Part shown: positions 1,086 through 32,877 of the stretch, in pieces | How the letters are laid out: every line of letters starts with the position of its first letter | How positions within the stretch are numbered: position 1 is the stretch's first letter | DNA from: Guillardia theta CCMP2712 | Taxonomy: Eukaryota; Protista; Cryptophyta | Assembly (NCBI RefSeq): GCF_000315625.1 | Contig: NW_005434636.1 | Coordinates: 514,424-578,423 of the forward strand | Direction: 5' to 3' | Length of the DNA: 64,000 bases | The notes under the pieces: model-generated | What the model saw: only the letters and a program-made list of their open reading frames with translations | Database searches by the model: none | What the model was told of the DNA's origin: nothing | Position numbers and translations under genes: made by a program

Positions 1086-1239
1086 CCTGTCTCCACTTGT
1101 TCTCTTTTGCTCCTGTCGAACCTTCACATTCATTACTTGCAGATATTTCATTTTTTGGTCTCCAATGAACCCTTGTGTAAGGAGTACTAGAGCGACTCTC
1201 ATAGCAGGTCTATGGAGACTGCTGACGCACCCTCATGCT

Positions 1240-7240: not shown

Positions 7241-7993
7241 AGCATAGTTTACCAGATCTTATGGCGGACTATGGAGGAGGAAGGACGAGGTTTGAGGTGC
7301 TTGCAGCTTCTGAGAGGCGGGAAGGGAAGGAGGAGGTCAGCTCTACGGGAGGCACCGCCGACTTACATGGACATTGCTTGATCTTGCCCGGCAGCTTGCC
7401 TGAGTTGAGCTCTGACGAGGCGGGTCTGCTTTAATTCACATGAATTTTATAAGTACAGCTTATCATAATTAAAAATAATTATTATTTGTATCATGAATTA
7501 CTTTTACATGCATTACTGGTTCAGTTACACAATTCTCAGCAATAGAGAAGATATTTATAGAAATCATTACTATTTAAGAAGTTAAGAGAATATTTTGGTA
7601 CAGACATTCAGGTACAAACATAATATCTCAGTACTATTTAATAATGGGTGCTTGTACCAGTGTCCCGTCCTAGGGACAGCGGACTCGTGCTTGGCGCCTC
7701 TGCCGCCATTTTTTCGGCATAGGGGGAATATATCTATCGATTTTTCAATATAGTTGAAAATTACAACCAATATTTGAACTTTGAACTATTGAATTTATGA
7801 GATGAAATGATATTTCGTGGCAGCATACTACACTAGTTCCTCGGCCCTTCAAAAGCAGCGGCGAGGAGCGATGGGCGGGAAGAAGAGGGGAATGCGCGCT
7901 GTTGAATCCTGCTTGCTCGGTCAATGAGGTGATGGTTAGCAGGAAGGGAGGATAGCAGAAATAGGTGAGCCGCAACTGAAACTCAAGTCGAAC

Positions 7994-10900: not shown

Positions 10901-13900
10901 TCTCCTGAGAGAGTTTTTGGTAGAGGTGGCAAGGAAGGCTGCATTTCGACCAAGCTCTTGCACCCGATGTACGATTTAGATGACCGCGAAGTGGATAGCC
11001 TGTATCATATTTTGACCAACTTTGTATGTATCATTCCGAAGGCAAGGGCCTTGCCTCCGAGCGCGGTGTTGAGTCATCCAAACCTGAACGAGAATATTGT
11101 GAACGAAGATCGCGTGCTGGATTGCAGACATTGGTTTTCATCATTCAACGATGTCTGCAGACCTGCATATATTCGTCAACAATTGTACTTCCCAGACAAA
11201 AGGTTGTTGCAATACGACTGTGGCAAGCTACAAGTTTTGGATGGAATGTTACGCAAACTCAAGAGCGAAGGTCATCGTGTGTTGTTGTTCACGCAGATGT
11301 CGAAAGTTCTTGATATCTTGGAAACTTTTCTCAGCTTTCACGGACATGTGTACATCAGACTAGATGGCGCAACCAAAATTGAGATGCGTCAGAAGCTTGT
11401 TGAAAGGTTTAACCAGGATCCAAAGATTTTGGTTTTTATCTCGTCGACACGTGCAGGGGGAGTAGGGATAAATCTGACAGGGGCAGATACTGTCATATTT
11501 TACGATAGTGACTGGAATCCTGCTATGGATCGACAAGCGCAAGATCGTTGTCACAGGATTGGGCAGACGAGAGAAGTCAACATCTATCGACTGGTAAGCG
11601 AGAGTACCGTCGAAGAAAACATTCTCAAGAAGGCTCGACAAAAGTTACAACTGGAAAATCTTGCACTGAAAGATGGAGCTGCTAGCCTCTTCAACCCAGA
11701 CATGTTCAAAAAGATTGATGTAAGTACACGCTTACTGCTTTTTGTCTTTCACTTACATCATATGTTACTAACTCATGTTGTAGGTAAGAGAACTATTTGA
11801 GGAAGAGAAGGCCCCTGTAGAACAAGTAGAAACAAATCCCTTGGCACATCTTCAAGCGCAAGAAAGTGCCACTCCTGTCAAGGATTCCAAAGGTGACAAG
11901 GATTCACGAAAGAATGTTCTTAGCGACAAAGAGTGGGAGCTTGCGATTGCAAATGCTGAAGACGAGCAAGACGTTGAGGCCATGAAGATTGCGAAGCAAG
12001 AGGAACGTGAAGAGATGGCTGATTTTGAGGACGAGGCACCAGCTGATGCAGGCGATCGAGATGTTTCTGAAGCGGCGCAAGATGATTTTGGACTTGGCAA
12101 AGTTGAAGCCGTTGCGATGGCAATTGAGAGCGAGCTCATGCCAGTGCAACGATATGCGCTACAATACTTGGAGAACGAGTTCAAGCAGGCAGGAATTACC
12201 CTAGTTGCTGGCGTGAACTTTGACAAGGAGCAATGGGAGAGAGATCAGCTTCGCCGTATTCGTGATCAAGACGCCGATCGCATGTATGATGAAGATGAAA
12301 TCCTCTATTACGAGGTTTCTGGATGCTCACAACAGGTAAAATTATTGGCACTCGAAACTTCCTTACGTTACCGTGGTTTGTGTTTTTTCACACCATTCAC
12401 ATCTGTCATGTTCTGTTTGCTTTGTGATTGTGTCTTCATACGACGAAGGAGCACTCAAGCCTTTGTCCCCTGAGCCCATATTCTTCCAGGTTTATCGTGA
12501 ACTCGTAAATCGCTTGCAGTCAGGGTTTGAGAAATCGAACCTTGACTTCGGTGGTTTTTACGAGCCACCCAATCCCGATGATGACAAGTTCACTTATATC
12601 AACGAACCCATGTACCAGGATACAGGTACGTTTGCATCGCAAATTTGGGAAGCACGGGTTCTTTCGCTGGTGTTCGATGCAATATCTGCAACGGATTCGA
12701 ACTACCCGAATCACCTGTTGCGATGGTTTTCGTTTTCTTTGCACGTCCTGCGAATGAACCTGTGCTCCATTTGTTGCGATGGAAACGGACTGTATCCATG
12801 CATTTTACATGAATTGAATCGTGTGCTTGTTTCACAACACCATTCACACTGTCTTTTATGTTGCTGCTCGTGATATGTGGGCTTGCGTGTGCAGATATTG
12901 ACTGACCTTTGATCTTTGTAGGGGTGAGATCGCCTCAGGGAACCAAGGTAAAGGGTCAGAGACCTGGTCCACCGCAGAACAAAGGGCTCAAGATCAAGTT
13001 CACGATGCCTCAAGCGGTTCAGGCAAACGCACAAGCTTCGGCACGACCAGGGCAGGGCCTGCAGTCTCAACTGAACAAGAAGATGCCGCCAACTCAGCCA
13101 GGACAGCAAGTCAACAAGAACCGAAGAGCAGGCATCTCCGCTGGAGATGTTCCATGGACGAAAGAGGAAGAAGATGTCTTGAGAGAATCTGTCAACCGTT
13201 TTCAGGGTGGCTCTGGTACACTACCCATTCGTACTTGGCATCTGCATGCTTCAATTTTGAACTCCAGTATTCCTGCCAGGGGACGACTCCGCATGGGGAA
13301 GCATTGCATGGACTATTGGCATGCACGGTTATCGACTGCTCAGCAAGGTCAAGGAAATCCTGACGGTCAGCAAAAGCAGCCTTTGTATCCTCCGCGATCA
13401 CAATCGTCAGAACCGACAAGAGACTCGAATATTGCATCCATCATCCGTGCGATGTTGTCTAATACTAAGTCCACTCAGAGTGGCCCCACTTTGCCTGGTG
13501 GAGGAACTTTACCCATGAAGCAGCGGGATTCTCTCCAAGTTCTGCCAGCACACGACTCTCACAGAATGATTGCAAACCAGGCTGCGCAATCTGTCGGCCT
13601 CAACCTTGCAACAGTCTCGAGCAACCCTAGCGAGCTGATTCGACGCATACTAGCAAAGATGCCTCAGCCTGCGCCCTCGCAATCCCAAGTGCAGCAGCAG
13701 CCGTTACAGCAGCAGCAAGCATCTCAGGGGGCTCAACAGTCTTTGCCGGCTTCGCAGCAGCCGGTGCCACCGTCGATCTCACAACAACCTGGAAGCCACC
13801 TCGTCCGTGGTCAACCACAAACATCAGCTGGGCTGGGACAAGGACCTCCCGGGCAGATGCCTGGCAGACCAGGAGCTCATCCATCGCAGCAGGTGCCCGT

Positions 13901-14624
13901 CCGAATGGGTGCGCAGCCGCCTCATCGTCCTGGAGCTCCGGTCGTAAGTGCGTCTGCTGCCTCCAAGGTTGTGGGCGCCGCACATGCCTCGCATGCAGCA
14001 GCCATGCAGGCGTCAAGGCCCATCACGTCGAAGCCTGGCATGCCTCCTACCTCCGCAGGCCCGCCAGTGTCAAGCTCGGTGGTGCTGGGAGGTGTGGGGG
14101 CTCCTTCTCCAATGGCCCATCCGTCAGTGGTGGGGATGCAGCAGGGTGTACGACCAGGGCAACAGAGCCCGATCCCGACGTCAGCAGCTGCGAGGGCAGG
14201 TCAGGGGCCTCCGACAGCCGGACGAGGTCATCCTGTGCATGACCCGACACAGCAATCGAGGCTGCACACTCAGGCGACTCCGCAGCAGCAGCAGGTGGCT
14301 AGACAGGCGGCTCTTGCGCAGCATCAGGCGATCCGAGCCCAGCATACGCCAGTGCCGCACCAGCACCCGCAGCTGTCACAAGCGGATGCGTCGCAGGTGG
14401 GATCCGGTCCTGTGCCGACGGCTCATCATGGCGCGGTCGCGGGGAGGCCAGGAGGCTATCCTCAGCCTCTTCCCCCCTCAGGGTTGATGGGTCAGCATCC
14501 GCCGTCCTCGATGGCGCCGGGAATGCAGCAGCCGATGATGCCGCAACACCCTGCGACGATGGCTCAAAACCGACAGAGAAAGCCGAAGAACGCTCCTGGC
14601 TCGTCACCGCAGAGCAGAAGATGA
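7994..14624 (+). CDS. SWR1: SWR1/SRCAP/PIE1-like Snf2 chromatin remodeller (H2A.Z deposition)
   Basis: HSA domain (HHDYLLEEMTWLATDFRQERKWK), acidic tract, ILADEMGLGKT, DEAH, split ATPase with a long insertion, DSDWNPAMDRQAQDRCHRIGQTR, SANT-like WTKEEEDVLRESV and a Q/P-rich tail; introns 11720-11783, about 12336-12490 and about 12625-12921. Confidence 0.93.
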
Positions 14625-14703
14625 TGTTGATGTTGAACAAGCTTTATTCTTTCATGGTTGAATAAACTTCCTCTTAGACCTTCACGTCTTGACATACAAG
14701 TAT

Positions 14704-17700
14704 TCACACATCCAACAAGCTTCGCTCCATCTCCCACAGCAGCTTCTCGTTCCTCTCTATCAGCTTCTCGTTGGCCTCACACACCTGCTGTGTCCTTGCC
14801 AGCCGAGCCTCCGCCTCCTCCACCTCTTCCTCGAGCTCGTCGATCTCCTTGGCCAGTCTCGCTCCTTGCTCGAAGGCTGATTGAGCTGCAGAGCCGTCAG
14901 CTGCAGGGACTAGCAACCTGCGCGCGCACCTGCTGCGAGCATGATGCCGTCCATGTCTCCCGTGGGAATGCGATCCTCGTGGCTCCCTGCCACCACGTCA
15001 CTTCCTCTTCGTCACCCTCCTTCCTCCCTTCCCTCCCATCTTTCTCTCCCCCTCTCCTCCTCCCCTCCCTCTCTCCTCCCTCCCGTCCCTCTCTCCTCCC
15101 TCTTCTCTTCATCCCACCGAGGGCAAACGCCTGGTGAACATCCTGCGCCATGGGGCCCATGTGAAGCGCCGACTGCCCCTCATAGCGCCAGGTGAAAACA
15201 GGCACGCGCTCGACCAGAGTCTTGAGCACGCGATCCGTGCTGACCTGAGGTAGTAGGGATGAGAAGTGCAAGAGCACGGGAGAAAGACAAGGGAAGGGAG
15301 TGGAAAGACGAAGAGGAGAGGAAAAAAGGAGGAGCACAAGACTAGACCGAAGAACAACGAAGCAGCAATGGTGTGAACAGGAGCAGAACCGGGGAGCAGA
15401 TCGAGAAGAGGAGGAGCGGAGGAGGGGAGGAGGGGAGGAGGGGAGGACTGGCCGATCACCTGAGTTCGATTCCACTTGGACCGCGCGTCTGACAAGGTAG
15501 ACCAGCTGCTGCTCTTGGGGAACAGCTGAGCACCTATCTCCCATCCCGAGGAGCGAACATCACTGACCTGCGCCACTGTCAGTACTCCTCTCAAGCAGCT
15601 GGCGGCAGGGCTGACCATTCGAAACCCTCCGCGCGCTCTAGCCCAGAACGAATCCTGCTTCACGTTGGGGGAGGAGGCGCTGGGGCTGTCAAGGAAGACG
15701 AAGGAGCCGGAGGAGTTGGAGAGCGACGCCAGGTCCCCATCGGTGAAGCTCCCGAGCACAGCTGCCTCCTTCACGGAGACCCTGAGGCTGTGAGCATGCA
15801 CGTGGTACTGCCCGGTGTGGGGGACGAGGCAGTAGGACTGGATGTTGCCGGTGGTGATCACAGTGCCGGAGCTGTCGGGGAAGGAGATCACGTTGGGGTT
15901 GGAGCTGGGAATCATCTCGAAGGCAGTGGAGGGCCTCCCAGCAAGGCTCGACTGGCCCACCTGGTCGTCCGACCCTGAGAAGACGAGGGGGAAGCGGCCC
16001 GTGAGCTGCACGTTCTGGAAGAGAGCGAACTGAGGGTCGTCCCCTAGCTCGCTGTCCCCGAAGAGGATCCTCTCTCCTTGTAGGTTCGCGTCGTTGTGCA
16101 GCTTCAGATCGCCGAGGACCTTGAGGAAGGTCACAGTTTCCGGCAGGTTGCCCGTCGTCAAGATGGTGCCGCTGGTGTCGGGGAGCGTCAGGATGTTGTC
16201 GCTGCTGCTGTCGGAGACGTCGAAGATCAAGTTGAACTCGTCCATCTTGTCGCCTGTGAAGGCGATGGACTGCGCGCTCAGGATGGCGTTGAACTCAACG
16301 TTGACCGCGTTCTCGTCATCGCCGAAGTTGACGAACGCCATGGAGCTGTTGGCATCTCGGGTGAAGGAGGCATGCTCGAAAACGAGCGGCTCGGACGAGA
16401 ACACCTGCGAGTAGAAGGGAGGGAGCGAGCCGCTGCTGAGCACGGTGCCGTGGGCATCAGGCAGAGTCAGGGTGTTGTCCTCCACCGGGTTCACGACCCC
16501 CAGGGTGGTCGCGAAGGAGCCGACGCCTCGAGCTCCGAGCGTCACGGGATAGTCGCCGGAGATGTCGGAGACAAGAGTCACCCACGACTTGTTGGCAGCG
16601 GCAGGGCCGGGGGAGTCGAACATGCCGTAGAGCAGTTCGGGGCCCTCCGGCAGGCTGCCGACCTGCAAGGAGGACGACATGATGCTCGCACTTCCTTCCA
16701 GCGTCACCTGCCCCAGCACGACCCCACGAGGATCGTCCACGTTGATTGTGGGGGAGTCGCTGGTCATGAGGGCGCCGGAGCTGCGGGGGAGACGAAGAAG
16801 GTGGTCGGAGCTGAGCACGCTCTGCCTGACCTCCAGCTGGTGAAACACCCGCGAAGTCGCGGAGGTTTCGGGGAGAAACTTTAGCGGGGAGGAGGTGATG
16901 TCGCCGAGGAGGTCGACTACCGAGACCTCGCCCGCCTCTCCCAGCACAAGATCGCCGCTTACCTCCATGCCGTCGGTGACTTTGACGCTGCTTGCCTGTC
17001 CTGTCTGGTAGGATACGTCCTTGAGATTCCCGGTCGAGATGACCTTGCCGTTTCTCGAGATCAGAGAGATCTCGTTCACGTCGTTCCACTGGGTGACGGG
17101 GAGCCAACCCAAAGCTGCGCACTTGGAGATCATGGCGGACTCGTTGTTATGAGGTTGCCTTACGAGCTTGTCGTCCACGAAGAAGCTGTCCACTCCGTTC
17201 TTGTTCAAGTCGAAGGTCGTGCTGATCCTGCCCGTGTGAAACTCGATCTTGTCGAAAGAAGAGCAGGCGAGAGGGGACGAGCCCAGGACCAGGACCGCAT
17301 GGAAGGGCTGGTCAACGACCTCGAGGTTCGCCACCTCCGTCCAGCCGACCAAGTTGGCGTCGGAGATGACCGCAAGCTCGGTCAGGTTCGCTTGCATTGT
17401 GCCGTTAGACATGGAGAGGCCAAGAACCTTCGATCCCTCCAGAGCTGCGGCGAAGTTGACCCGGGGCAGGACTCGGATGTGCGAGATGGAGGTTGGCGCT
17501 GGCAGCTCAAGGCCCATGAAACAGAAACTCTCCTCTACCCACTTGCTGCTCTCGTTGACCTGAATCTCCATGAAGCGAGACCAAGCCTGTGACGCTGCTG
17601 TGGCAGACATGGACCCGTTCACGTCGAGAGGATTGAACATGGCGGAGACGAACTCGTCGATCGATGGGTCCTGTAGGAACCTGATGTGCATGTTTGACTC

Positions 17701-20700
17701 CACGACCGAACAATTGGAAATAGATCGAGAAAGAACAAGGCCCGACGGCACTGGGTTGCCCGGGATGAAGTCAGTGCAGATGGGGTTTGAGACATCCGCA
17801 ACTTCACTGACGGGAGCTCCTTTGATCGTGTTGAGGAGGTAGGAAGAGTTCAAGCTGCTGTGGTTCAAGTACTTCCAGAGAATCACTGTGCTGGAGGCTG
17901 CGGGGAGAGAAAATGATCCACTCGGACAGACAATCTGGGAGCCTCCTCGCACAGAGCATTGCTCATAGGGGAAGACTGCGAGGACGCTATAATTAGAGAT
18001 TCCCTTGGGAGGATTCAGCCTCATCGTCAGATCGCAAGTCGGACCGAAACTAGCGTGAAAGGTGCCGTTGAAGCCGCGCTGGAACCATCTTCCTTCGAAC
18101 GCGTCGGTGCTGGGCAGCGGCTGGAAGTCAGTCAGGTGCAAGTCAAGTCCCTGCAACCAGCCATCACTCGATCCCAAGTTCAGTTGAGCGCCTCCTTGCA
18201 GCCTCCACTGCCCAGGCACTTTACACTTGCGCATCTTCCTCAGCACTCCCCATGCCGGCGTAGCTTGCAACAGAGTCGGTCGGAGGAGTTGACGATCCTC
18301 CAGGTAGTTGCCCCACGTCTGGAGCCCCCAGGGCCTCCCGTCTCCTTGCATGTCGCACATCTGGAGCTGGGAGCACTGGAAGACAGGAGCGAAGCCGGCT
18401 TGCATGACGAGCTCGTTGCACTTGGAGATGCTGAGGGTTTCTGTTCCATTCAGCGGGTCTCGATACTCCAGCACTGTCGGGGCGTCCACATTGTTCTTCT
18501 CCTGCAGCACGTTGATGGGCAGGTCCTTGGCGCCTGCCGGGTCATTGAGGTAGTAGCGGATCGCCGCATCCTTGCTGTACGTTCGCGCTGGGGAGATGCG
18601 GAGATGATCTTGAGTCCTCTTGCGAATCGCGCACCTTCCCTGCACCGTCGGCGAGAGGGTCCACTTGCCGTAATCTTTCTGCTCCCACTCCTGTGCGAGA
18701 GGAAGGAGAGTGAGGGGGGGGGGAAAGCAAGCAGCAGGGCTCTCACCTCCCAAATCCCAGGGTCTTCTCCTGAGATCTGAGGTCCGGGAAACAGCAGGTC
18801 AGCATCGACGGGGCTCCAGGTCATGTGCCGCATCCTCAACTTGATCGGACGGTCCATCTTGGCGCTCTCGTTGAAGCCGATGCGGTAGCCGATGTACCTG
18901 AGGCCGGAGGTCACTAGAAGGAGAAACTGTGACTTGAACTCACCATCTGCCTTCGCTCGGGTTGTCCTTCGTGTCAAGCTTGTAGGAACTGTCGAGGATG
19001 TTGGCCTGGTAGAATATGTAGACAGGTTTCTCTCTGTGCTTGTACACAGGTTTCCTCGAGAACGTCGAGTGCAGGTCGAATTGCCCCATGAGCTCTGGGA
19101 AAAACACTGCTCCTTCGATGATGACAGACTCGCAGCCGCCGGACGTTCTGAGTACCATCCCAGCATCTCCATCCAGATACGCGTGCATGTGGATCTTTGA
19201 AACGAAGTCGTTGGGGTCCCCGAGCTGCAGGTCTCCTCCGAAGCCGACATGCCCACCTGCACCTAGTCAGACCAAAGGAGAGAGTGAGAGAGCTTACCAG
19301 CATACAACGATCCTGAAGGCAATGCCATCTTTGGGAGTTGGAGCAAGTTTCCAGTTGTTATGATGGTTCCAGAGCAGTCGGGGAAGAGGATGGTGTTGTT
19401 GTTCGTGATGGTCTCGTAGCCGATGGTCGTTGTAATGAGTCCCTGCTTGTCTTGACCAACAAGATCCTTGATGTTGACCCACTCGTCTTGCGGCTGAAAG
19501 AGCTCGAAGTCACAAGCAGCGACGCACTTCGTGTTGTAGAGCTGGAGATGAATGCCTGACGGCTGCTCCCTCCTGACACGATATCGTTCGATCCCATGGC
19601 ACCTGTGCTCACACTTCATGATCTGATCTGCTGGACAGCACCTCGCGTCCACGTCGCAAGGCTGCCCCATGTAAGGTCCTGTGAGACAGACGTAGGAGCT
19701 AACGCATTCTTGGTTGCTCGATGGACAAGACACGCCAGTGGGACAATCACTGATCAAGACATTCTGCATCCAAAGGGACTGGTTGCCTCCTCGGGTCTGC
19801 TTGTTGGAGACCCTGTCAATGATGACGCACATGGAGATTCGCTGAATCTCGTAGTCGATGATCCCAGTGATCTGACCGGAAGGCTTGATCGGGAGCTCGT
19901 AGGGGGACTGATACGCGGGCATCAAGCCAGTGGTCCCATCGTTCTTGGTTGAGTCACGGAAGTTGGACCCTGCGAGCATGTTCATGCTTCCGACGAACCT
20001 GAACTTGTCGCTCAATCTGATCTTGACGGATGACTTCGTCTGCAGCTGAGCAGGGGTCAGGGTGTCCTTGATACCCATGTAGATCATTCCATCCAGGTAC
20101 AGGTTCCGCAGTCTCATCTTCCTGAAAACGATGTCGTCGATGTTGCCGCTCGTGATTACGGTTCCCGTCGCGTCAGGGAATGTGATCCTCCGATTCATGA
20201 CGTCTGCTGGAGGAACATGCGCAAGCGTTTGCGTGTTCGGGAGGTAGTAGTCAGGAAGGCCGCCTTCCTGCACATACAGGCGGCAGCCGATGCAGCTGGT
20301 GACGGAGCATTTCGTGTCAACCGTGAAGGTGTAGTTACTCGCCTTGAACGGGTCCATGAGGTAATCAAGGCCTTGAATGAAGGTGCCAACGTTTGAGAAT
20401 TGAGCTCTGCACGTGTAACCTGATACGGTGAAGCCCAAGGCTGTCCAAAGGCTCGACCCGCTCGCCCAGTTGAAGTTGCTGAAGTCACAGTTGCTCGGTG
20501 GATAATTGGCGAAATGTTTCTTCATGCACCTGTTGAGGCCCGAGTCTTCGAGGCATCTGCTCAGGCTTCCATCGAGTGTCAAGCACTCGTAGGCAGACTG
20601 ATGATGAATCATGATGTCTCCGTTTGGAGCTACATTCTGTATTCCCGGAAACCCTTGAACATCCACAAGATTGCCAGACGTGATCACGGTACCTGATCGT

Positions 20701-23700
20701 TTCCCAGGCATCAGTTGAGAAACATTGGATGAGATATTCCCTATCCCAAAACTGATGCTGTAGTTTCGCAAGTAGAGCAACAGCGAGCTATCTAAGCTTG
20801 AGGGCTTTCCTTGCAGTCTACAGGCATCTGCAGGAGAATATGCTAGGATGCAGGAAACAGATCCATTCACATCCGTCACTCGATACGTCAGGATCCCGCA
20901 CTCCGGCTCCCTTTCGCACGCCTGCTTGCAGACTAGTAGAGACAGTGCTTGCATCCTAACGATCTTGACTGAAGCTTCTCGAACAGTTCCTTTCCTGCGG
21001 ATGACGTTGGGATAGGAGGGGTCAAACTGAACGCTCATGGTGTTGGAAATAACACTGCCAGGCAGGTAACAAATTGAATTCGAGTGATCGCTCCAGGTCA
21101 AGGGAAGACCCGGGCGAAACATGTCCGGGACGTTTCTATAGGTGAGCGAGTCAGGAACAGATCCTTGAAGCAGCACAGGCTTCATGCCACAGAGTCCACC
21201 CGAGGAGCAGTCGAGAGAAGTCACCGTCGCTGCCTCCCACTGGCTGTTGTACGTCGACCACTTGGAGCCGTCTGCTTGACCGTAAACCCCAGGGGGGGGC
21301 CTGTACACGTTGGCGAACGGCGCCATGTTGAGCCCCCCCCCGACAAGAACTTCACCGAAGAGACGGGTCTCACTGCTCACGTTGACAACCTGCCCCGTGA
21401 AGTTCTTGACGTCACGAATGTTGCCGGTGGTGATGATGGTGCTGTTGCATGCGAAGGGCATACTGCCGTCGCACGGGTGGAGGGAGTAAGACCTCCCTGT
21501 GATGTTGCTGTAGGTGTGCGATATGTTGTAACTCTGAGTTCCCCAAACCATCGGGAATTCGATCTGTGCGACCGATCCAGCGCGGGTCAGGAAGGAGACC
21601 CGGGAATCACTGTCGGAAGTGTTGAACAGCATGCCTCGAGGCAATGAGCTCTCTCCGGGCCCAGTCCGCGTGTCGAACATGGTGAACCAAGGGCCGTTGT
21701 TCCACAGCCACTTGGAACCTCCCTCACTCTTCCCCAAGGATGTTCCCTGTGACCACCAAGAGTCTTGAACGTTTTCATCCAGCAGGCTCGAGTAACTTGT
21801 CGAGGGCTCAAGATACCCGACAGTCAAGCCTCGCCTGAAGTAGGAGAGCTGGCTTACACTCAAGCTGTGAAGTGGTCCTGACTCTGCCGTGATGTCTTGC
21901 AGGTTGCCGGTTGTAATGATGATGCCGTTGGTTGAAGGGAAAAGCACATTGTTTTCTGACTGTTTGGAGTCAGACTTGGCAAGAGCTTCAAACTGCAAGA
22001 TTGTCTTATTGCCATCTGTTCCCGACGACAACAAGAACGTGAGATCAGATTTGTGGGAAGCGAAGATGTAAGAGTCCGTGTCTCTGCTATAATTCGCTCC
22101 ACACATCTGAAAATTCACCCGATACGGCGATGACCGCACTCGCGAGCATTCCAAGTCTGTATCAAACCCGAAGTCAAAGACCTGCTGCGCTAGGATCCTG
22201 CTTTGAGTCTGGTTGACCACGTAGAGCTGGTTGTCGGAGAAGGCAAGAAAGGGCTTCTGCCTGCACTTGACCTGCACATTCATCCATAAAGTCTTGGAAG
22301 GACAAGTCTTCCACAGGTTTGAGTCCAGCGAGTACAGGGCTCGTCTGGCAGAGATGGAGCACGAGGTCTTGCCAATGCAGGAGATGAAATTCCCGTCCGT
22401 CGTCTTGCGCGTCCCAGCCAGCCATGGGGCAAGATCAACATCGCACGGGTGAGCAGTATACTCGCCGCAGAGGCCTCCAGTCTGTAAGAAGAGATGTCAG
22501 CGGTCAAGAACAGAGGCACTTCAGCAATTCATGATGACAACAAGGAAAGCAGTCGGATCGAGTGCACATTCGGCCTCAGAAAGTGTATGGATAACAGGAT
22601 GTGACTTACATTGCCCATCCTTGCGTATGAAAATTCTGTAATTTCTCCTCCAACTCCGCAAGACAGTGTTTTTGTTTCATTTTCATGTAGCTCTGCGCAA
22701 ACTCCCTGGTGCTGAAGGGAAAATCCATTCACCGATGCCGATTCTGATTTTGCAATGGACCACAAGTGTGGGTTCACGTCGTATACATTGGGACTACCAT
22801 AAGCAAAGGTGTTCAAGTTTGCCAAGCTCCTCACCTCAAGGGACTGGTTTGTGTAGTTGGAGCAATCAGCAGTGGTTAAGTTGGCGTTGCAATTCACATC
22901 GATCAAGATTTGCAAAGCATCAAGCTGCTTCTGATACATTTCAAGGATAAGTGGAATAAGATCAGGCCCCCCCGCAAGATAATTCCTTTGACCATAACTC
23001 TGAAAGAATGCTAGACAGCCGGGTAGCAGAGTGCCATTCAGGTGAGAATCTCGACTGTCACTTACTGAACATCCCGTCCTGAACATTTTCCATCTGTTGA
23101 AGTGAAGCGATCCGTCAGAGGGAGGCAGAGCTTGAGAGGTGGAATATGAAGGAATCAAGAAGCCGCCGCTCGACAACGAAACCAGGTTGAAACGAGAAGC
23201 CCAGATCAAGGAACAGCTCTGATCCTTGCATGATCGAAAGCACTGGGACAAATTGGAGACCGTCAAGTTCAAGCAAAAAGTTCCGAAGTCGGACTTGTAG
23301 CACTTGGAGTCAAGACTTGTGAGGTTCAAGTTCTGCAGAGACTGGAGTGGCTCTGTGATGAGGTTGGAGCACTGCGATTTTAAGCTTGTGTTCCATCCCA
23401 GGAGGAAGTCGTTGGACCTCAACTGGAATCCAGAGTTGAGCAAGTGGTCTTTATCGTTGCAATCCGTCCAATTGCATTCCCCCGCGTGCGAGCCTGATCC
23501 GAACTGAAGCCACCCGTAAACCTGTAGGTTGCTGTTGACTTGCAGTCCGGTAGCCTGTCCATACTCCAGCAAGACGTCCTCCAGGTTCCCTGTCGTCAGA
23601 AGGATACCATCCTGCACCGGCACACGCAGCGAGTTCCTGAGCTTCGGAGGAGTAGGCGTGCCCTTCCTTGGGGAGAGGTCAGCGCGTACTTGAGGGGAGT

Positions 23701-26700
23701 CCCACAGCGAGCCGTTCAGGGCCTGGATGTCCGGGGAGCAGTGACAGCCCAAGAGCATCTCAGGGGTGTTGACATTGACATTGTTGTCGGCTGAGCAACC
23801 TATGCTCAAACAGACGTCGTGACTTGGAGGCCAGAGGCTCGGATGATTCTTGCCAAACTTGAGGTGCACGACTGTTTCCTTGGTTCCTCGGTTCAGGCGC
23901 GAGTAACCCAGCAAAGGAGCTCCCTGAATACCTGGAGAGAATAGTAAAAAGCATGTTTTATCCACAACGATCATATCCAATCTCACCAATAGCTGTTATG
24001 TCTTCCAGATTGCCGGTCGTGATAACCTTCCCAGAAGCAGCGGGATACTGAAGGTACCGATCTGCTTGCGGAGTATCGAACACGATTCTCATCGAGGCAT
24101 TTCGCTTTGACAGCAACGTTTTGTTGTAGCAAATGTACGAGCCAGACTGTGTGTTGTAGGTATCTGTGTAGTCGCAGGCCTTTGATGGGTCTGTGTCTGA
24201 AGGGAGAGCCAGCGAAGGCACCACGTTGCACACGTCTGCACCATTCTTACAACAACATCTGAAACATCTCTCTGCATCCGTTACTGGCCCCAATTGGAAT
24301 CGGTTTTCGAAGTCGTTTGCTGTTGCGAGCAATTCTCGCTGATCTACATGCACACCCATCATGTTCATCCACAACAAGGCGAACTCCGTCTGTGTGACGT
24401 TGGACGGGACGTCCTGAATGATGATGTCATGATTTAGGTTGTATCCGACAGGAAAGTCCTCCGACCATTCTTCCCATGCTGTATCGATATCGTTGGGGAC
24501 AAGGGCATCTGAAATTGTTTTCAGATTGATGTTGTACGAATTCATGCTCGAGCCAACCGCCCAGTACAGCACGGACGAGTATGCTTCCTTGTTATAGTAC
24601 AGAAAATTTGGGCCATTCTGTTGCCGAAAGACAGGTCTTCCGTGCATTTGCATCTCTGTCATGTGGTAAAAGCCGCTTGCATTGGAAGTTTTCGCTCCCG
24701 TCAACAATTTGAGGGTGCCCATGGAAGTGTTCTGGTAGAACCTCCTCCATCCGATGGCCTTTCTGACTCTTTCTGCCGAATCAACAGCCTCCTGCATTTG
24801 GCTGGTCAAGGGGGCCGACAAGTTGATTGAATCACTACTGTATGTTTCAATCAGAGTGACATATCCGATTCCTGTCAGATCGACAATCGTTGGAAGCTCC
24901 CTTCTGACGTAAAGCATCTCAATCAGGTCTGCTTGCCGTAGGACCATGTCTTCCCAACCAGATACATCATAATAAATTCTGAAATAATCGAAAAAGTTGC
25001 TGGAGAAGTTGAAAATAGTGCAGTCTGATGGTACACCATTGACAAGAACATTGGATCCAACAATGTAAGAGAAGAGATTAGAAGCATTTTTCAAGACATG
25101 CACATCTTTTTGATTTAGGACGAGAGTTTCGTTTTCTAACATTACAGTGATGATACGATTGTTGGCAAATATGATGGACGTGACAATACCGGTCTTGTTG
25201 CTGTATTGTGGAAAGCCAACCGAGGGATCGATGATAACCTGAGCCCCCACTTCTAGCTCCAGGTTGTTGTTCGTGTATCCTGAAAGATTCTGCGGGACCA
25301 GAGACGATGCCATGGAGCCATCTAACCTGAGAAGAGGACCATTCCACCAGGAGGGCACATTCACAGAGTCCTTCAAGAGAGGCATGGACGTGCCTGAAGC
25401 TGCACTCCATTGGTGCCGGTATTCAGAGCAGTTGAAGGAGCAAGTCAAAGTTCCATTGTTGTCTCTACAACAAGTCACTCTTGCTGGTGTAAAGAAAAAT
25501 CCAAGCGGCATGGTAAAGTTCAAACTTGATTCTGAGAAGCAACAAATAGTTAGTTGAAATTACAGCAACAGGATTTGGGACTTACTGTAGATGAAAGCTG
25601 ATTCTGATTTGAGTCCAGGCAATGAAGCCAAATCTTGTAGATTCCCGCTTGTTATGATGACTCCTGATAGCGTAGGCTGCCATGAGACATTCTGAAAGCT
25701 CTTGGATCTAGACCATGCTTGGTTTCCTTGCCTGTCGGGCAATAATGTTTCGAAGTGAGTGCCATAGGCTACTTGTCTTGAAGGACTGGTGAGAGGATCG
25801 GGAATGGCGTTTGGAAGTGAAATTTCATGATTTCTAGTTGGAGAGTCCAGGCAAACTCTTACAAAGTTGCCGACAGAGTGCTTTGTCAGGTTTGTTTGTG
25901 TATCCAAGTCACGAGGTCGACCGGCATTGAACAAGAACGGACATTCGCGGTATCCCCATTCTGATTCTGAATGTTGCTCAACCAGCCTGAATCCATTCCA
26001 GACGACCTGGTGAGGCTGGGTCGAGTATTCTCCGCCCACAAACAAGCGTTCGTTCACTTGGACTCCCGTGGGTCCATTGCTCGATTCAAAGATCCCCTCG
26101 CGCTGAGTTTGCGCAACATTCTGTTCGTTCAAGTATTGTTTTGCTGCATTGTAGTATGCATCAAATGAATCCTGATTTAAAAACTAGATCAATTACCCGA
26201 CACAAGACACTGTCTCACTTACGGATTTTTGTTGTATGTACATGAGTTCTGCGTCGTCATCTTGAGTATGGGAGCCTTGCTCTCTTGGCATCCAGCCGAC
26301 ATGAGAGTTGCCTACGATTCCATCAATGAATATATGGGTGGCTTGCGACAGGTTTGAAAAGGGAGTTCCATCTCCACCATGTCCAACTTGCACATAGCCA
26401 CCCGTAAGCTCGCTTTGCATGCTGATTTGGACTAGGTGTGAGATGTTTGTGTCTGGAGCGGTGATGTCGACGCCCTCCGTTCCTGTTTCATTCAAGTATC
26501 TGATTCTCACGAAATGTTCCGTTCCATTTTGCGTCGCATCGTCATAAAGATGTGCGATTTGGAGAGCAGGATCACTTTCAGCAGTGTCCAACGAGTCGCT
26601 CAATGCCCCAACACTGAACCTGTACGATGTCCGCATACTCGTCGCGCCCTCGAGGGACTTGATGGTCATGGCTCCAACCTACCAAGGGACAACAGTCATC

Positions 26701-27466
26701 GAGACATACGCAGCACAGATGGAGAAGCAGCTCGAGCAAGTGAGTTGGTCGGCTACTCACCGTGGTGGCATCTTGAGATCGTTGGCAGCTCATTTGACCC
26801 GACATCCCGCAAGGGTTACCACACTGATCCATCACAGGATGATTGCACTGAGTAGTAGCGACATTGAGGATGCACTGCCTGACATTGAGACCCTGTCCTG
26901 TCTGGTGACAAGACCTGAGCAAAGAGGGGCAGAGGGTCAGCAAGTCTCGAGCAAGGTCATCAAGGGTTACCTGTCGCATCGGTTCAGTACTGGGATTCCA
27001 CACCTGTCGGATGACTCAGCACAGCTCTAGGCAGGGATCGCGGCTGCTCACGGGACACTGTCGAGGTTCAGATTGCATCCCAGGTCGCAGAAGATCAGGG
27101 GCCTCCAGTCGTTCACCCCGTCGCAGGCCTCGAAGGCAGGCTGCTGGCCTGATACCGGCGGGGTTCCCCAGCGAATGGCTCCCTTACGAGAGGGGTTGCA
27201 TCTGAGTGATCCAACGGGTGTGCTCACAGCAAGACCTGAAGTTGGTCTCCGTCAGATCCAGGAACAACAAGCCGATGGCGCTCACCATAAATCTCGAAGT
27301 TCTTTTCTATGCGGACACCAGCTTGAGCCAGAAATTCTTCCTCGATGGAATACCCCTCTCTGCTCAACGTAACGTATGGAGCAGAGGGGAAGACGGATGA
27401 CAGTAGGAAAAGAAGTAGCAAGGAATCATGAGAAGAGAGCTTATGACGGCTCGAGAAGAACATCAT
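14704..27466 (-). CDS. Giant (about 3,900 aa) fibre-like protein: tail-fibre-like repeats, SUEL lectin, PAN-like and discoidin-like modules, C-terminal peptidase S74 chaperone
   Basis: ORF segments 27224-27532, 26578-27003, 26193-26669, 25560-26132, 23958-25523, 22529-23989, 19263-22283, 18940-19188, 15109-18753, 14897-15544 and 14704-14916 join in frame through canonical GT-AG introns checked by hand. The PDxSGTIITTGN motif recurs throughout; the C-terminus reads WSTLSDARSK...WRY...HMGPMAQDVHQAFAL...DMDGIMLAA. Start codon is tentative. Confidence 0.8.
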
Positions 27467-28131
27467 GGTAGAAATATGGTACATGTGGGAAAACTCATGC
27501 GAAAAGATGAGCTGCAGGCAGACTGTACACAAGGAAGGTGGAAGACATGCAGGATCCCCTCATGTCACGGGGAGACGTGCAGGAGGACGTCTGAGTGCGC
27601 GCCATGACGTCTGAGAGAGGTGCTTTCCTGCCCTCCCTTCATTTCACCCTCACGTCTCCGCGCCCCTCCATTCTGAACGACACTTCAGATTCGACCCCTA
27701 CCCCCAATTTACCCTCCCTGAATCTGGATTGTTAATGGTGGGTAGGTACCCCTACCCTATCGTTTTACTTCAGATCACCCCACCTACCCCGAGCTCTCAA
27801 GAATGACAAGCACATGACAAGCATGGGAATAGAGCGGAGCGAGTGATGTAAACAAACAGGAAAGAAACACATCGAACAAGCAGAAAACACATGACAAAGA
27901 AACAAGCATGTCCCCTACACTTCTATGATAACTGTCATCTGATCTTTTAAAACCCTGTGAGAGCAACACTTTCTTAACAACTCTAGAACGGAATCCAACC
28001 CCAAAAAGATGAAGCTTCGAAGACAAGGCAGATTGTTTTTAAGTATCATGAGCAAATGAATAAAAACTCATTGCATATTCCGCATGCACAAGGGAATCTG
28101 GTCCTGGAATGAGTAAACAGCGAGTATCCCT

Positions 28132-30184: not shown

Positions 30185-32877
30185 ATGCGGGGCAAGAAGG
30201 AGGGGATGGAGCTGGAGGAGAAGGGCAACAAGGGAAAGCTGCTGGAGTTCAGAGTATCAGGTGTGCTTGTTTCTATGGCGTCTCCCTCCCTTACCTCCTC
30301 ATCTCGATGCAGATCCCTCCTTGTTCTCCGTACCTTCGAAAGTTCACCCTGAACCAGCGGGGGAAGAGCGGGCGTTGATTGCGAGGAAGAAGAGCAAGGT
30401 AGGATGCTGCTTGCCCTTGTCCTTGCTGTCGCTCACTCCCAACTTCCAGCGGAACGCAATCAGATTTGTCAGAGAGCTGATCGTGTTTGTGCTGTGGGTG
30501 ACATGCTTCTCTGCAACAATTACTTTAACGAGGGACAACACCCTGAGCTATCAGTTCGGCTTCTTGTTCAAGAACTGGCTCATCACAAACCCAGGCTGGG
30601 GGCAGGAGCTGACAACAGTGGGAGACTTCTACTCCTTCTTGCAGGAAGTGCTGGTGAAGATACTTGCTGATGACGTTCTTCCACTTGGCACCTACTCGCC
30701 GTCTCTGTCGGCAAAGAGCTTCCTTTACGGGAACAAGAGGATCGGACCTCTCAGAATCCGACAAGTGCGCGTCCCCTATACGACCTGCCGCAACCAATAC
30801 CTGACAAGAATCCTCGGAATCGACTCTGCTGTTTCCAACATCCACTGCTACCCGCCCTTCAGCCTCTCCACGAACTTGGACAGCAAGTTCATCAATGATC
30901 TCGGAGAAACTCCCAAGTTCAACCCAACAACAGAACCTTGGTTCACTTTCTATACCGCGAAACAACTCTCCGAGATGGCGTACTTCCAGGCCGGCTTCGC
31001 AAGTTACCCCGGGTCAGGTTATGTCCTTGACGTCGACAAAACGTAACTAGACAAGTATCTGTATGCTCGAGAGTGATGCTTTCTTTGCAGTTTCTCTATC
31101 ACAAATGATCTTGTGATGGAGTTGATTCCCATCGATTCAACGCAGAATGTCAACACAAGTCTCAAAACCATTCAAGACTCAGGATGGATAGATCTCATGA
31201 CAAGAGCCATCTTCGTTGATTTCTCCTTCTGTGTGTCCTATACCCGAGCATCTCGTCTTCTCCTGACGTTTCACCTCAGTTAATCCCAATCTCAACCTCT
31301 TCTTGGTTACAAGGCTTGTGATCGAGTTCCTGTAATCTTGCAGATTTGACTTGTTCGAATGTCTGTAATGTTTGAACTAGGCCATCGGGAACAGTAACGA
31401 TGTATCCAACATTTCGAATCGTAGACCCGTTTCGATTCTCGACGGGAACAACAAAGGACTTGCTTGTCATCGCTGCATTCTCAGCTGTGGTGCTCATCAC
31501 TTTGTACTATTTCCTTGCCGACATGCTAGACATAGCGAAAGGTCCTTTCAGATTCGTCAAGTCGTTTTGGCAGGTAACTACTTTTAGCAAGCAGAAGCAA
31601 GGCATACGATCTGTGACGAATTTTGCCCGCAGATCTTTTCATTCTTGAATGTCCTTATGATGTTGGCACTGGTTGGTCTGACGGTCTGGGATGAGATGGC
31701 TGCTCGAGCGTTGTTTTCAAGCCAGCAGGGTTCGATCAAGCAAGGAGATCTGCAAGCGACAGGGTACATGTTGGATCAAGAGAAGAACCTGGCTGGGATC
31801 ATCTTGATTTTCATGTGGATCAAACTTTACAAATACTTCTCCATGTCACGAAAGCTTTCAACACTCACGCGAACCATTGCCAAGGCAGCATCGAACGTCA
31901 TATTCATTCTGATCGTGCTAATTATCCCTACCATTGGCTTTGCCATGGGATGTACATTGATCTTTGGATCTGACGACTTTTACTTCTCGAATTTCAAAAC
32001 CTCTCTTTACACGCTTCTTCGAGCAGCTTACGGAGATTTCAATTTCCAAGATTGGTCGTCAAACCGATACCTCGGTCCCATCCTGCTGCTCTTTTGGGTG
32101 TTCTTTTCAAACTTCCTTCTTCTCAACATCATCATCGCTATACTGTGTGACTCGTTTGCGGTTGTGATGGCTGAGAACGAGGAGCTAAGAGCGAGGGGAG
32201 TCAAGAGTGTCTTGGACATCTTCTTGGAATCAGGAGTCTTCGGAAAGAGGATCACCAACATCATCGAGAAGCAGAGGCAAGTCGAGGACATCGAAGCTGC
32301 TCTTGAGAAGATGGATGCAGATGGTGATGGCAAGACAGACATGCAGGAGCTTGAGTCTTGGCTGTCCTCTACAGGTGCCGACGTCGTGCTGGGAATGAAC
32401 GCAGAGGACATCATGGAGAAGTACGACAAGGATGGGAGCGGGCTGTTGGACGCGGAGGAGATGGAGCAGATCAAAAGGTGGGTGGCCTCTGAGAGAAAGA
32501 AGATCGAGGAGGAGAGACGGATGGACTCGGACGCGATGCTTGACACCGACTACCTGGAAGAAAAGCGGACGAAACCGAGCTTCGACAGCTCCACTGCCAT
32601 GGCGTTGATGCAAGGTGGTGGAGGAGGTCTGTCAACTGCTTCTGAGGAGAGGATCTTGAGCATTGAAAACAACGTGAAGGAGATCAAAGAGAAGGTTGAA
32701 GAGATTCTCAACAAACTGAACAACCTACCTCGACTCGAACTGAACCAATCCTCGTCGCAGCAAGGTAAGAGTGACAGTGACCGGGTCAGATCGACGGTCA
32801 GGGGCAGCTCTACCTTGGGCAAACCCAAAGTTGAAAACAAGTTCATGGCAGAGAAGTCCATTGTGAGCGAAGACTAG
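30185..32877 (+). CDS. PKD2: Polycystin-2 (TRPP) cation channel with EF-hands
   Basis: S1 helix, TOP domain (NKRIGPLRIRQVRV, YPGSGYVLD, GWIDLMTRAIFVDF), WIKLYKY, pore TLLRAAYGDF, LLNIIIAILCDSF, two EF-hands (DADGDGKTD, DKDGSGLLD) and a coiled coil. Confidence 0.9.

What the first reader, a model, noticed from the sequence alone, without database searches (positions are those of the whole stretch)
14704..27466. Giant algal fibre protein built like a phage tail fibre
Seen: about a dozen GT-AG introns join 11 separate ORF-track entries into one frame of about 3,900 aa. It has a hydrophobic N-terminus (SLLLLFLLSSVFPSA), many N-x-S/T sequons, about 13 dispersed shaft-like repeats and a C-terminal S74-like domain. 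Known: peptidase S74 (ICA) domains trimerise phage tail fibres and tailspikes and then cleave themselves off; MYRF is the main characterised eukaryotic case. Inference: a domesticated, secreted homotrimeric filament carrying glycan-binding modules, such as a flagellar hair filament, periplast fibril or prey/substrate adhesin. I know of no description of such a system in algae. This is the best candidate in the window.
Basis: partly seen in the sequence, partly recalled or inferred. Interest (0 to 1): 0.92.

Follow-up and report, generated by a model that had tools for sequence, protein, structure and literature searches.

The report
Giant algal self-cleaving trimeric fibre gene
A normal, intron-containing nuclear gene of this alga encodes a secreted protein of about 3,885 residues built like a phage tail fibre, with a self-cleaving trimerising end piece; it belongs to an undescribed family of giant protist proteins and is almost silent in the available cultures.

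Summary
On the minus strand, 14704-27466 is one gene of 16 exons and 15 short GT-AG introns, encoding 3,885 aa. It has:
- an N-terminal signal-like peptide
- 13 shaft motifs (PDxSGTxxTxGNL)
- 63 N-glycosylation sequons and 99 cysteines
- one CBM32/62-like beta-sandwich
- a C-terminal Peptidase_S74 (ICA) domain with the Ser-x4-Lys dyad (S3754/K3759), followed by a coiled coil

There is no transcript proof in this genome: RNA reads were almost absent. However, every splice junction is bridged by uninterrupted reading frames of paralogues or orthologues. A 5,000-aa relative is carried on a polyadenylated 15.4-kb mRNA contig.

The family has about 100 clusters, many of 3,000-5,800 aa, and three copies in this genome. 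The gene lies between ordinary host genes, not inside a viral element.

A homotrimer model of a 40%-identical relative scored 0.85, against 0.00 for the best control.

Best reading: a secreted, glycosylated homotrimeric fibre, zipped up and then released by its own ICA domain, and used as a conditionally expressed extracellular adhesion or recognition filament.

This is a new variant of a known kind. The scan had noted the same stretch before (S74, repeats, modules); I tested those notes here.

The parts
14704..27466 (-). Whole gene: 16 exons, 15 introns, CDS 11,658 nt, 3,885 aa
   Evidence: Model built. All junctions are bridged by homologous uninterrupted frames. Giant relatives are colinear with it in tblastn.
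27286..27466 (-). Exon 1 (aa 1-60), including the signal-like peptide aa 1-28 (27383-27466)
   Evidence: It holds the only hydrophobic segment of the protein. The N-terminus aligns with that of P0129 and of the C61 paralogue, each with its own signal-like peptide.
27052..27235 (-). Exon 2 (aa 61-122), conserved N-terminal module (GSLRCNP..AIRWG..CDGVNDWRPL)
   Evidence: P0129 residues 73-115 match 27215-27066. Junctions J1 and J2 are gap-free against the C61 paralogue.
26971..27003 (-). Exon 3, a 33-nt micro-exon (CGIPVLNRCD)
   Evidence: Found from the family motif PCG..VNN.CG. Coordinates. Gap-free against C61 and C51.
26761..26914 (-). Exon 4, a Cys-rich motif conserved across the family (GLNVRQC...CN.PV.D.C.N.CG)
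   Evidence: About 50% identical to P0150, P0012, P0143 and P0008. Alignment.
26223..26678 (-). Exon 5 (aa 185-336)
25586..26171 (-). Exon 6 (aa 337-531), holding shaft repeat 1
23987..25531 (-). Exon 7 (aa 532-1046), sequon-rich modules and repeat 2
22610..23931 (-). Exon 8 (aa 1047-1487), repeat 3 and Cys-rich modules
   Evidence: The only RNA-type contig seen, 196 nt at 22972-23167, lies here.
19298..22481 (-). Exon 9 (aa 1488-2548), repeats 4-8. It has a weak PAN/apple-like match at 20835-20966.
   Evidence: PAN_1 scored E 0.018 and 15.3 bits, below the 21.4-bit cut-off, so this is a lead only.
18944..19256 (-). Exon 10 (aa 2549-2652)
   Evidence: Aligned with P0001, P0005 and P0014..
18747..18897 (-). 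Exon 11 (aa 2653-2703)
   Evidence: 49% identical to P0001 residues 208-258..
15616..18690 (-). Exon 12 (aa 2704-3728): globular modules, repeats 9-13 and the conserved pre-ICA region
   Evidence: An HMMER search with this exon found 104 relatives. Family profile.
17224..17541 (-). Galactose-binding-domain-like beta-sandwich (about aa 3087-3192)
   Evidence: AF2 pLDDT is about 80-94 in this part only. Structural matches: Z 11.9 to CBM62 2yb7, and Z 8-9.6 to CBM32, F-lectin and discoidin folds.
15841..25664 (-). 13 shaft motifs '(F/L)PDxSG(T/K)V(I/L)(T/S)(T/S)GN(L/I)'. Each motif begins at 25664, 24032, 23608, 21926, 21443, 20693, 20165, 19370, 17049, 16779, 16449, 16170, 15867 (27 nt each, reading downwards).
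   Evidence: The family profile re-finds them as partial matches.
15460..15567 (-). Exon 13 (aa 3729-3764), start of the ICA domain. Predicted nucleophile Ser3754 = 15490-15492; Lys3759 = 15475-15477 (SDARSK).
   Evidence: Sequence read. S and D are invariant and K is at least 90% conserved in the family alignment. The dyad spacing equals that of MYRF S578/K583 (PMC3742443).
15118..15244 (-). Exon 14 (aa 3765-3806), core of Peptidase_S74
   Evidence: PF13884 scored 22.6 bits against a cut-off of 22, and 24.8 bits.
14930..14986 (-). Exon 15 (aa 3807-3825), ICA 'DxDG' segment
14704..14885 (-). Exon 16 (aa 3826-3885 plus the stop codon), C-terminal coiled coil
   Evidence: Heptad-rich sequence. 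It aligns with the family's coiled coil. The trimer model shows heptad-spaced contacts here.

Best explanation
This is one resident nuclear gene for a 3,885-aa secretory protein that works like a phage tail fibre made by the cell itself.

Shown by sequence or by models:
- A signal-like peptide at the N-terminus.
- A conserved N-terminal module.
- A long, variable, Cys- and sequon-rich middle that holds globular modules, at least one of them a CBM32/62-like beta-sandwich. These are spaced by 13 phage-like shaft motifs.
- A conserved C-terminal shaft.
- A Peptidase_S74 (ICA) domain with Ser3754 and Lys3759, followed by a coiled coil.

Inferred mechanism, from what is established for K1F endosialidase, other phage fibres and MYRF:
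1. The chain enters the ER.
2. The C-terminal coiled coil and ICA domain bring three chains into register.
3. They template folding of an intertwined trimeric shaft from the C-terminus towards the N-terminus.
4. The Ser-Lys dyad, which becomes active only in the folded trimer, cuts before Ser3754 and releases a 132-aa fragment.
5. The glycosylated, disulphide-bonded trimer of about 3 x 3,725 aa is exported.

Most likely use (inference): an extracellular adhesion or recognition filament that displays several lectin-like modules. It would be made only under particular conditions or life stages, because it is almost silent in ordinary cultures.
For: - One gene: 15 junctions are bridged by homologous uninterrupted frames. 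An orthologue on a metagenome contig is colinear over aa 174-3885. Giants of 3,354-5,478 aa are colinear from 27215 to 15107. A 5,000-aa relative lies on a polyadenylated 15.4-kb mRNA contig that starts at about the same 5' position in several runs.
- Resident host gene: 15 spliceosomal introns with branch-point motifs. The flanking genes are a SNF2/HSA remodeler, a polycystin channel and a kinase. There are two paralogues in the same genome. By contrast, a viral-type S74 fibre gene elsewhere in the genome is AT-rich and has no introns.
- ICA domain: Pfam hits. Family profile match at 266 bits. S and D invariant, K nearly so. 37% identity to phage virion proteins over the ICA part.
- Trimer: ipSAE 0.85 against 0.00 for the best of 3 controls. 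The runs share at least 94% of contacts and the partner pLDDT is at least 78. The test was run on a relative, P0017:24-355, which is 40% identical. The mark was reached by 21 of 30 known homo-oligomers and 0 of 23 single chains in the tool's calibration, which used two copies, not three.
- Secretion: the only hydrophobic segment is the N-terminal one, and there are 63 sequons and 99 Cys. Signal-like peptides are conserved in P0129 and in the C61 paralogue.
- Lectin-type module: Z 11.9 to CBM62.
Against: - There is no transcript evidence in this organism. The search found 2 RNA reads in 19.8 million records and no splice joints, so expression, splicing and even function in this strain are unproven.
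- Only 6 kb (21601-27600) could be laid against reads. The 3' half was not tested.
- The trimer test was run on a relative, not on this protein. It may partly reflect the model's memory of solved ICA trimers.
- The monomer AF2 models of the shaft and of the N-terminal module were of low confidence.
- The shaft repeat resembles phage repeats at motif level only. tblastn with two repeats found nothing in 50,697 phage records.
- No anchor (TM or GPI-like) was found, so it is open where the fibre ends up.
- No SignalP-type predictor was available.
- Sugar binding by the CBM-like fold was not tested.
Confidence: 0.62

Rival explanations
1. It is a constitutive structural part of the flagellate cell: a flagellar hair (mastigoneme) filament or a periplast surface fibril.
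For: It is a secreted, glycosylated, fibrous design. The next gene upstream is a polycystin-type channel. From my own knowledge, PKD2 anchors mastigonemes in Chlamydomonas.
Against: It is almost silent in RNA data from cultures of this flagellate. A part needed at every division should be well expressed. The polycystin neighbour is not conserved next to the paralogues or orthologues.
Confidence: 0.12
2. It is an endogenised viral fibre gene (polinton-like virus or giant virus) that sits in the genome without any host function.
For: S74-ended modular fibre proteins of up to 3.9 k aa are typical of cryptophyte PLVs (PMC12220804). This genome holds a viral-type S74 fibre gene on C94. Expression is almost nil.
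Against: It has 15 spliceosomal introns and host-like GC of 46-61%. No capsid, ATPase or integrase genes flank it; the neighbours are host genes. An 11.7-kb frame is intact. Paralogues and a full-length colinear orthologue at about 30-35% identity imply long purifying selection. The neighbours of the relatives look eukaryotic (NPHP4-like, EF-hand). A search of 2.9 million viral contigs found only two motif-level matches.
Confidence: 0.1
3. It is a decaying or never-expressed gene (pseudogene) in this strain.
For: Near-zero RNA coverage.
Against: No stop or frameshift occurs in 3,885 codons across 16 exons. All splice sites are canonical. The catalytic Ser and Lys are retained.
Confidence: 0.06
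4. It is a MYRF-like membrane-tethered factor that is released by ICA cleavage.
For: It shares the ICA domain followed by a coiled coil.
Against: It has no Ndt80-type DNA-binding domain and no other Pfam hit. There is no hydrophobic segment after the ICA domain. The topology is N-terminal signal peptide, not type II.
Confidence: 0.02

Closest known systems
Phage tail fibres and tailspikes with a C-terminal intramolecular chaperone (K1F endosialidase, T5 L-shaped fibre pb1, GA-1 neck appendage; Peptidase_S74, PF13884)
   Same: The ICA domain sits at the C-terminus with an S-x4-K dyad. It follows a repetitive shaft that is predicted to form an intertwined trimer. The ICA part is about 37% identical to phage virion proteins. 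The shaft motif 'F.G...ETTL...DN.ITLPD.SGTV.T.G' is also seen in a marine phage structural protein.
   Different: This gene is encoded by a eukaryotic nucleus. It has 15 spliceosomal introns, an ER signal peptide, many sequons and cysteines, and is 4-10 times longer. It is not next to virion genes. No PHROG or NCBIfam fibre family matches the shaft.
Fibre proteins of polinton-like viruses of cryptophytes and other protists (PMC12220804)
   Same: Large modular proteins, up to 3.9 k aa, that end in Peptidase_S74 and occur in the same algal group. They are thought to be trimeric attachment fibres.
   Different: Those lie inside 14-40-kb viral elements and carry Laminin_G_3, collagen, adenovirus-fibre or PTR domains. 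This gene has introns and host neighbours, and none of those Pfam domains. The viral-type copy in this genome (C94) is AT-rich and has no introns.
MYRF / MrfA membrane-bound transcription factors
   Same: They are the only well-studied eukaryotic use of the ICA domain. The logic is the same: trimerise, then self-cleave at a Ser-Lys dyad. A coiled coil follows the ICA domain.
   Different: MYRF has an Ndt80 DNA-binding domain and a TM helix, and it acts in the nucleus. This protein is a secreted fibre with neither.
Giant fibrous surface glycoproteins of algae (Chlamydomonas sexual agglutinins SAG1/SAD1, mastigoneme protein MST1). Comparison from my own knowledge, by analogy only.
   Same: Size class of 2,000-3,900 aa, secreted, heavily glycosylated and fibrous. 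The agglutinins are made only in gametes, which would fit the silence in vegetative cultures.
   Different: No sequence relationship was tested or expected. Those proteins are hydroxyproline-rich and have no ICA domain.

Membership tests
Peptidase_S74 / ICA domain (PF13884) | Profile match at or above the curated cut-off | tested here: met
   22.6 bits (cut-off 22) on exon 14 alone, covering profile positions 20-53. 24.8 bits. Relatives with an unsplit domain score 23.4-36.4 bits over positions 1-53.
Peptidase_S74 / ICA domain (PF13884) | Catalytic Ser and Lys five residues apart (SDxxxK) | tested here: met
   SDARSK, with Ser3754 and Lys3759. S and D are invariant and K is at least 90% conserved in 18 relatives. 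The spacing is the same as MYRF S578/K583.
Peptidase_S74 / ICA domain (PF13884) | Drives homotrimerisation of the upstream stalk | tested here: inconclusive
   In silico only, and on the relative P0017:24-355: ipSAE 0.85 against 0.00 for the best control, with an interface along the whole chain. It was not run on this protein because its domain is split by introns.
Peptidase_S74 / ICA domain (PF13884) | Autoproteolytic release of the domain | not testable with these tools
   Needs expression of the C-terminal fragment and S3754A / K3759A controls.
Phage or viral virion fibre (structural gene of a virus) | Encoded within a viral genome or element next to capsid or tail genes | tested here: not met
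   The flanks are a SNF2/HSA remodeler, a polycystin channel, a ubiquitin-like gene and a kinase. The gene has 15 introns.
Polinton-like-virus fibre proteins (PMC12220804) | Laminin_G_3, collagen, adenovirus-fibre, PTR or BppL_N modules upstream of S74 | tested here: not met
   Pfam found none of these at E <= 0.1 on any exon.
MYRF family | Ndt80-type DNA-binding domain before the ICA domain and a TM helix after it | tested here: not met
   No such Pfam hit. No hydrophobic segment apart from the N-terminal one.
Galactose-binding-domain-like modules (CBM32/CBM62/F5_8_type_C/F-lectin fold) | Beta-sandwich fold match that covers the domain | tested here: met
   Z 11.9, rmsd 3.4 A, 96 residues aligned to 2yb7 (CBM62). 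About ten further CBM32 / F-lectin chains score Z 8-9.6. Model pLDDT is about 80-94 in this part.
Galactose-binding-domain-like modules (CBM32/CBM62/F5_8_type_C/F-lectin fold) | Sugar-binding site and actual glycan binding | not tested
   Sequence identity is only 4-19% and there is no Pfam hit. The ligand is unknown.
The new giant-fibre family itself (about 104 clusters) | Signal peptide, conserved N-terminal and Cys-rich module, shaft repeats, conserved pre-ICA region, ICA domain, coiled coil, in that order | tested here: met

The most novel reading that the evidence does not exclude
Protists have taken over the full phage-fibre assembly logic (shaft repeat plus self-cleaving ICA chaperone) as a cellular gene family. 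They use it to build very long, multi-lectin extracellular filaments that are switched on only in special situations. Possible uses are gamete or cell-cell agglutinins, or decoy and trap fibres against the fibre-bearing viruses that infect them. This alga keeps three such genes silent in vegetative culture.
Probability: 0.2. Interest if true: 0.8.

Novelty: new variant of a known kind. Interest (0 to 1): 0.62.

Why it matters
Outside viruses, the ICA (S74) domain has one well-studied eukaryotic use: the transcription factor MYRF. In this gene the same trimerise-then-cleave device is kept in its original fibre-building role, but in a host-encoded, intron-bearing, secreted protein. That protein belongs to a family of 3,000-5,800-aa proteins seen in aquatic metagenomes and transcriptomes.

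If confirmed, this would:
- document gene flow between phages or protist viruses and their hosts that produced a working cell-surface structure
- give a molecular handle on fibrous surface structures of cryptophytes, for which I know of no identified genes
- provide a eukaryotic system for studying chaperone-templated folding of very long trimeric fibres

Tried and rejected
- Word-indexed protein search with the 1,112-aa exon: no hit. This was an effect of the length filter; the exhaustive HMMER search then found 104 relatives.
- RNA evidence: both run searches listed no RNA holder. The single read-laying run, on 21601-27600, gave 2 raw RNA reads, one 196-nt contig and no joints. Runs X2 and X4 proved to be DNA, colinear with the genome including the introns.
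- Protein atlas: only weak leads, or none.
- PDB sequence search with the family profile: nothing significant; MYRF at E 0.78.
- PHROGs and NCBIfam on the shaft: nothing apart from one weak PHROG hit.
- tblastn of two shaft repeats against 50,697 phage records: no match.
- AF2 monomer of the fibre region: low confidence except for the CBM-like domain. AF2 of the N-terminal module, taken from the C61 paralogue: mean pLDDT 45.7, so not used for fold search.
- First version of junction 2 (62-nt intron): replaced by a 33-nt micro-exon with two introns, after the family motif showed the missing 'PCG..N..C'.
- Polycystin neighbour as a functional partner: no conserved synteny.
- Search for the SRA run ids of the 5,000-aa relative in papers: none found, so the organism remains unknown.
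- P0143 was too long for the contig look-up.
Full report
**Setting.** The window is contig C38:514424-578423 of an 87.1-Mb assembly in 669 contigs. From memory, that size and contig count fit the cryptophyte Guillardia theta. This is my inference, not a tool result. The finding lies on the minus strand.

**Checking the observation: the gene model.**
- Six-frame ORFs and stop-free segments show a chain of long open segments on the minus strand from about 27.5 kb down to 14.7 kb.
- Joining them needs short GT-AG introns with good signals: GTAAGT or GTGAG donors, a CTGAC-like branch point and a YAG acceptor.
- Three refinements came from homology:
  - a 48-nt in-frame intron at 15615-15568, which restores the family's 'GG.k.vtG....G.e.G..L' spacing
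  - a 44-nt intron at 14929-14886
  - a 33-nt micro-exon at 27003-26971, which restores the family motif 'PCG..VNN.C'
- The final model has 16 exons, 15 introns (41-215 nt), a CDS of 11,658 nt and 3,885 aa, from ATG 27466 to TGA 14706-14704.
- Each of the 15 junctions is crossed, with 0-2 gap characters within +/-12 residues, by an alignment to an uninterrupted reading frame of a paralogue (C61, C51) or an orthologue (L005, L003).

**Checking the observation: the other features.**
- The strict shaft motif occurs 11 times in the six-frame translation of the whole 64-kb window. All copies lie in this gene's coding frames. Shuffles of the protein give 0.002 on average. Two looser copies bring the total to 13.
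- There are 63 sequons (about 37 expected) and 99 cysteines. Almost all cysteines lie before aa 3,250.
- The only strongly hydrophobic stretch is the N-terminal LLLLFLLSSVFPSA.
- Pfam Peptidase_S74 scores 22.6 bits (cut-off 22) on exon 14 alone. The catalytic 'SDARSK' lies in the exon before it.
The exception is transcript evidence.

**Transcripts.**
- No run on record as RNA holds the stretch.
Two 2011 runs proved to be genomic DNA.
- The gene is thus nearly silent in the cultures sampled, and single-transcript status in this organism is unproven.
- Indirect support comes from a relative. P0129 (5,000 aa) has a homologous signal-peptide N-terminus and an S74 C-terminus. It lies on contigs from five runs that all begin 237-270 nt upstream of its ATG. 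One of them (L023) ends in a poly(A) tail 136 nt after the stop. A family member is therefore made as one 15.4-kb mRNA.

**The family.**
- An exhaustive HMMER search of 1.84 billion representatives with exon 12 gave 104 hits: 35 at E <= 1e-10, best identity 35%.
- Many hits are uninterrupted ORFs of 3,000-5,800 aa from metagenomes or run assemblies, with S74 at the very end.
- tblastn of these giants against the window is colinear from 27215 to 15107.
- One metagenome contig (L005) carries an orthologue colinear with aa 174-3885 at 30-35% identity. It is itself split into several frames, which suggests introns. It groups with this gene in a tree at 98/99 support.
- Its neighbours look eukaryotic: an NPHP4-like gene and EF-hand genes.
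- This genome has two paralogues. One is on C61 (about 116.7-108.7 kb, minus strand), with the N-terminal 1,723 aa in one exon and its own signal-like peptide. The other is on C51 (about 432.1-445.4 kb).
- The N-terminal 320 aa and the C-terminal 700-800 aa are conserved. The middle varies.

**Host gene or viral element.**
- The flanks are ordinary cellular genes. A SNF2/HSA chromatin remodeler is convergent with this gene, and its stop lies 80 nt from this gene's stop. Also nearby are a polycystin-type channel with EF hands, a ubiquitin-like protein and a protein kinase.
- GC is 46-61%.
- By contrast, the other S74 hit in the genome (C94) is a 990-aa ORF without introns, in 30-45% GC DNA. It has Gly_rich_2 plus a strong S74 match (64-68 bits) and PHROG tail-fibre hits. 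It is probably one of the few polinton-like virus insertions reported for this alga (PMC12220804).
- A scan of 2.9 million viral contigs with the family's C-terminal alignment found only two motif-level matches.
- The gene is therefore a resident cellular gene, not a provirus relic.

**How phage-like it is.**
- The ICA part of a relative is 37% identical to virion proteins or 'chaperone of endosialidase' of Agrobacterium, Ochrobactrum and Pseudomonas phages.
- The family alignment shows the pre-cleavage pattern 'N.F.V.A.GG....TG....G...G..L.....W..LSD...K'. S and D are invariant and K is nearly so.
- A profile built from 18 relatives, without this gene, aligns end to end with spliced aa 3565-3892 of the interim 3,899-aa model (model2). 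That range equals aa 3551-3878 of the final model. The score is 266 bits (E 1.9e-83), with no gaps at the four junctions.
- The shaft unit, '..F.G......L......N.(I/L)TLPD.SGT..T.GNL', has a counterpart in a marine phage structural protein: 'MKFEGATANAFETTLRVDDPSQDNIITLPDISGTVITSGD' (L025). That protein in turn matches pelagiphage and cyanophage proteins.
- This is motif-level resemblance only. A direct tblastn with two of this gene's repeats found nothing in cultured phages, and no curated family covers the repeat.

**Structure.**
- Three copies of relative P0017:24-355 (40% identical to this protein over the aligned part) gave ipSAE 0.85, 0.84 and 0.85. The best of 3 controls gave 0.00. The runs share at least 94% of contacts and the partner pLDDT is at least 78.
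- Contacts run along nearly the whole chain and become heptad-spaced in the last 55 residues. In the tool's calibration the mark was reached by 21 of 30 known homo-oligomers and by 0 of 23 single chains. That calibration used two copies, and solved ICA trimers may be remembered by the model.
- This supports an intertwined trimer capped by the ICA domain and a coiled coil. It does not prove it.
- A monomer AF2 model of aa 3068-3779 of the final model (window 15463-17598) was of low confidence, as expected for a fibre. The exception is a beta-sandwich at about aa 3087-3192. That domain matches CBM62 at Z 11.9 and many CBM32, F-lectin and discoidin modules at Z 8-9.6.
- The N-terminal module could not be modelled.

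**Mechanism and function.**
- By analogy with endosialidase and other phage fibres, and with MYRF (PMC3742443), the C-terminal coiled coil and ICA domain should register three chains in the ER. They would then template shaft folding and cut before Ser3754, releasing 132 residues.
- The mature product would be a glycosylated, disulphide-rich trimer of about 3,725 residues per chain, studded with globular modules.
- No TM or other anchor is present. The conserved N-terminal module is the obvious candidate for attachment, but this is inference.
It points to conditional use, for example a life stage, stress or an encounter with another organism.
- The polycystin neighbour is suggestive, because PKD2 anchors mastigonemes in Chlamydomonas (my own knowledge). 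However, it is not syntenic at other family loci.

**Comparison and novelty.**
- The closest known systems are phage ICA-ended fibres, PLV fibres of cryptophytes (S74-ended, up to 3.9 k aa; PMC12220804) and MYRF.
- This gene shares the ICA logic with all three.
- It fails the defining context of the viral ones: it has introns, host neighbours and none of their Pfam modules.
- It lacks the DNA-binding and TM domains of MYRF.
- Literature searches found no description of a cellular giant-fibre family of this type in algae.
- I rate it a new variant of a known kind, with interest 0.62.

Noticed in passing
G000:C94:203087-206059 (L019:3087-6059, minus strand; also L001): An AT-rich (30-45% GC) 990-aa ORF without introns. 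It has Gly_rich_2 plus a strong Peptidase_S74 match (64-68 bits) and PHROG tail-fibre hits. It looks like the fibre gene of a viral (polinton-like?) insertion and makes a useful contrast to the intron-rich host-type fibre gene. No capsid gene was looked for.
   Followed up: partly
window 30261-32877 (+): A polycystin-type cation channel (Polycystin_dom, PKD_channel, EF hands) is the next recognisable gene upstream of the fibre gene, in divergent orientation. The adjacency is not conserved at the paralogous or orthologous loci.
   Followed up: partly
window 7994-14624 (+): A SNF2/HSA/Helicase_C chromatin remodeler, followed by a Q/P-rich open frame of 571 aa. It is convergent with the fibre gene. 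The two stop codons are only about 80 nt apart, so the 3' UTRs must overlap or be very short.
   Followed up: no
G000:C61:~108700-116657 (-) and G000:C51:~432100-445400 (+): Two paralogues of the fibre gene, with the same conserved N- and C-terminal regions. In the C61 copy the first 1,723 aa lie in a single exon, so the intron positions differ between paralogues.
   Followed up: partly
L023 (Logan contig of SRR15274671), 1-15413: A polyadenylated 15.4-kb mRNA contig that encodes a 5,000-aa family member (P0129). The same transcript occurs in four more runs of the same series. The organism is unknown.
   Followed up: partly
L025:7476-8777 (+) (IMG/VR contig of 109.6 kb): A marine phage structural protein carries the motif 'FEGATANAFETTLRVDDPSQDNIITLPDISGTVITSG', nearly the same as the algal shaft unit. 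It matches pelagiphage and cyanophage proteins. No curated family covers this repeat.
   Followed up: partly
window 14000-26000: GC content rises steadily along the gene, from about 0.46 in the 5' third (24-26 kb) to about 0.61 at the 3' end (14-16 kb). The introns follow the same trend, from 0.36 to 0.68. This is unexplained.
   Followed up: no
L012:3072-18460 (+): On this metagenome contig the family gene is called as two adjacent ORFs (2,095 and 2,819 aa) on one strand. A 5,118-aa single-ORF version sits in the same 90% cluster, so one of the assemblies has a frameshift or an intron.
   Followed up: no
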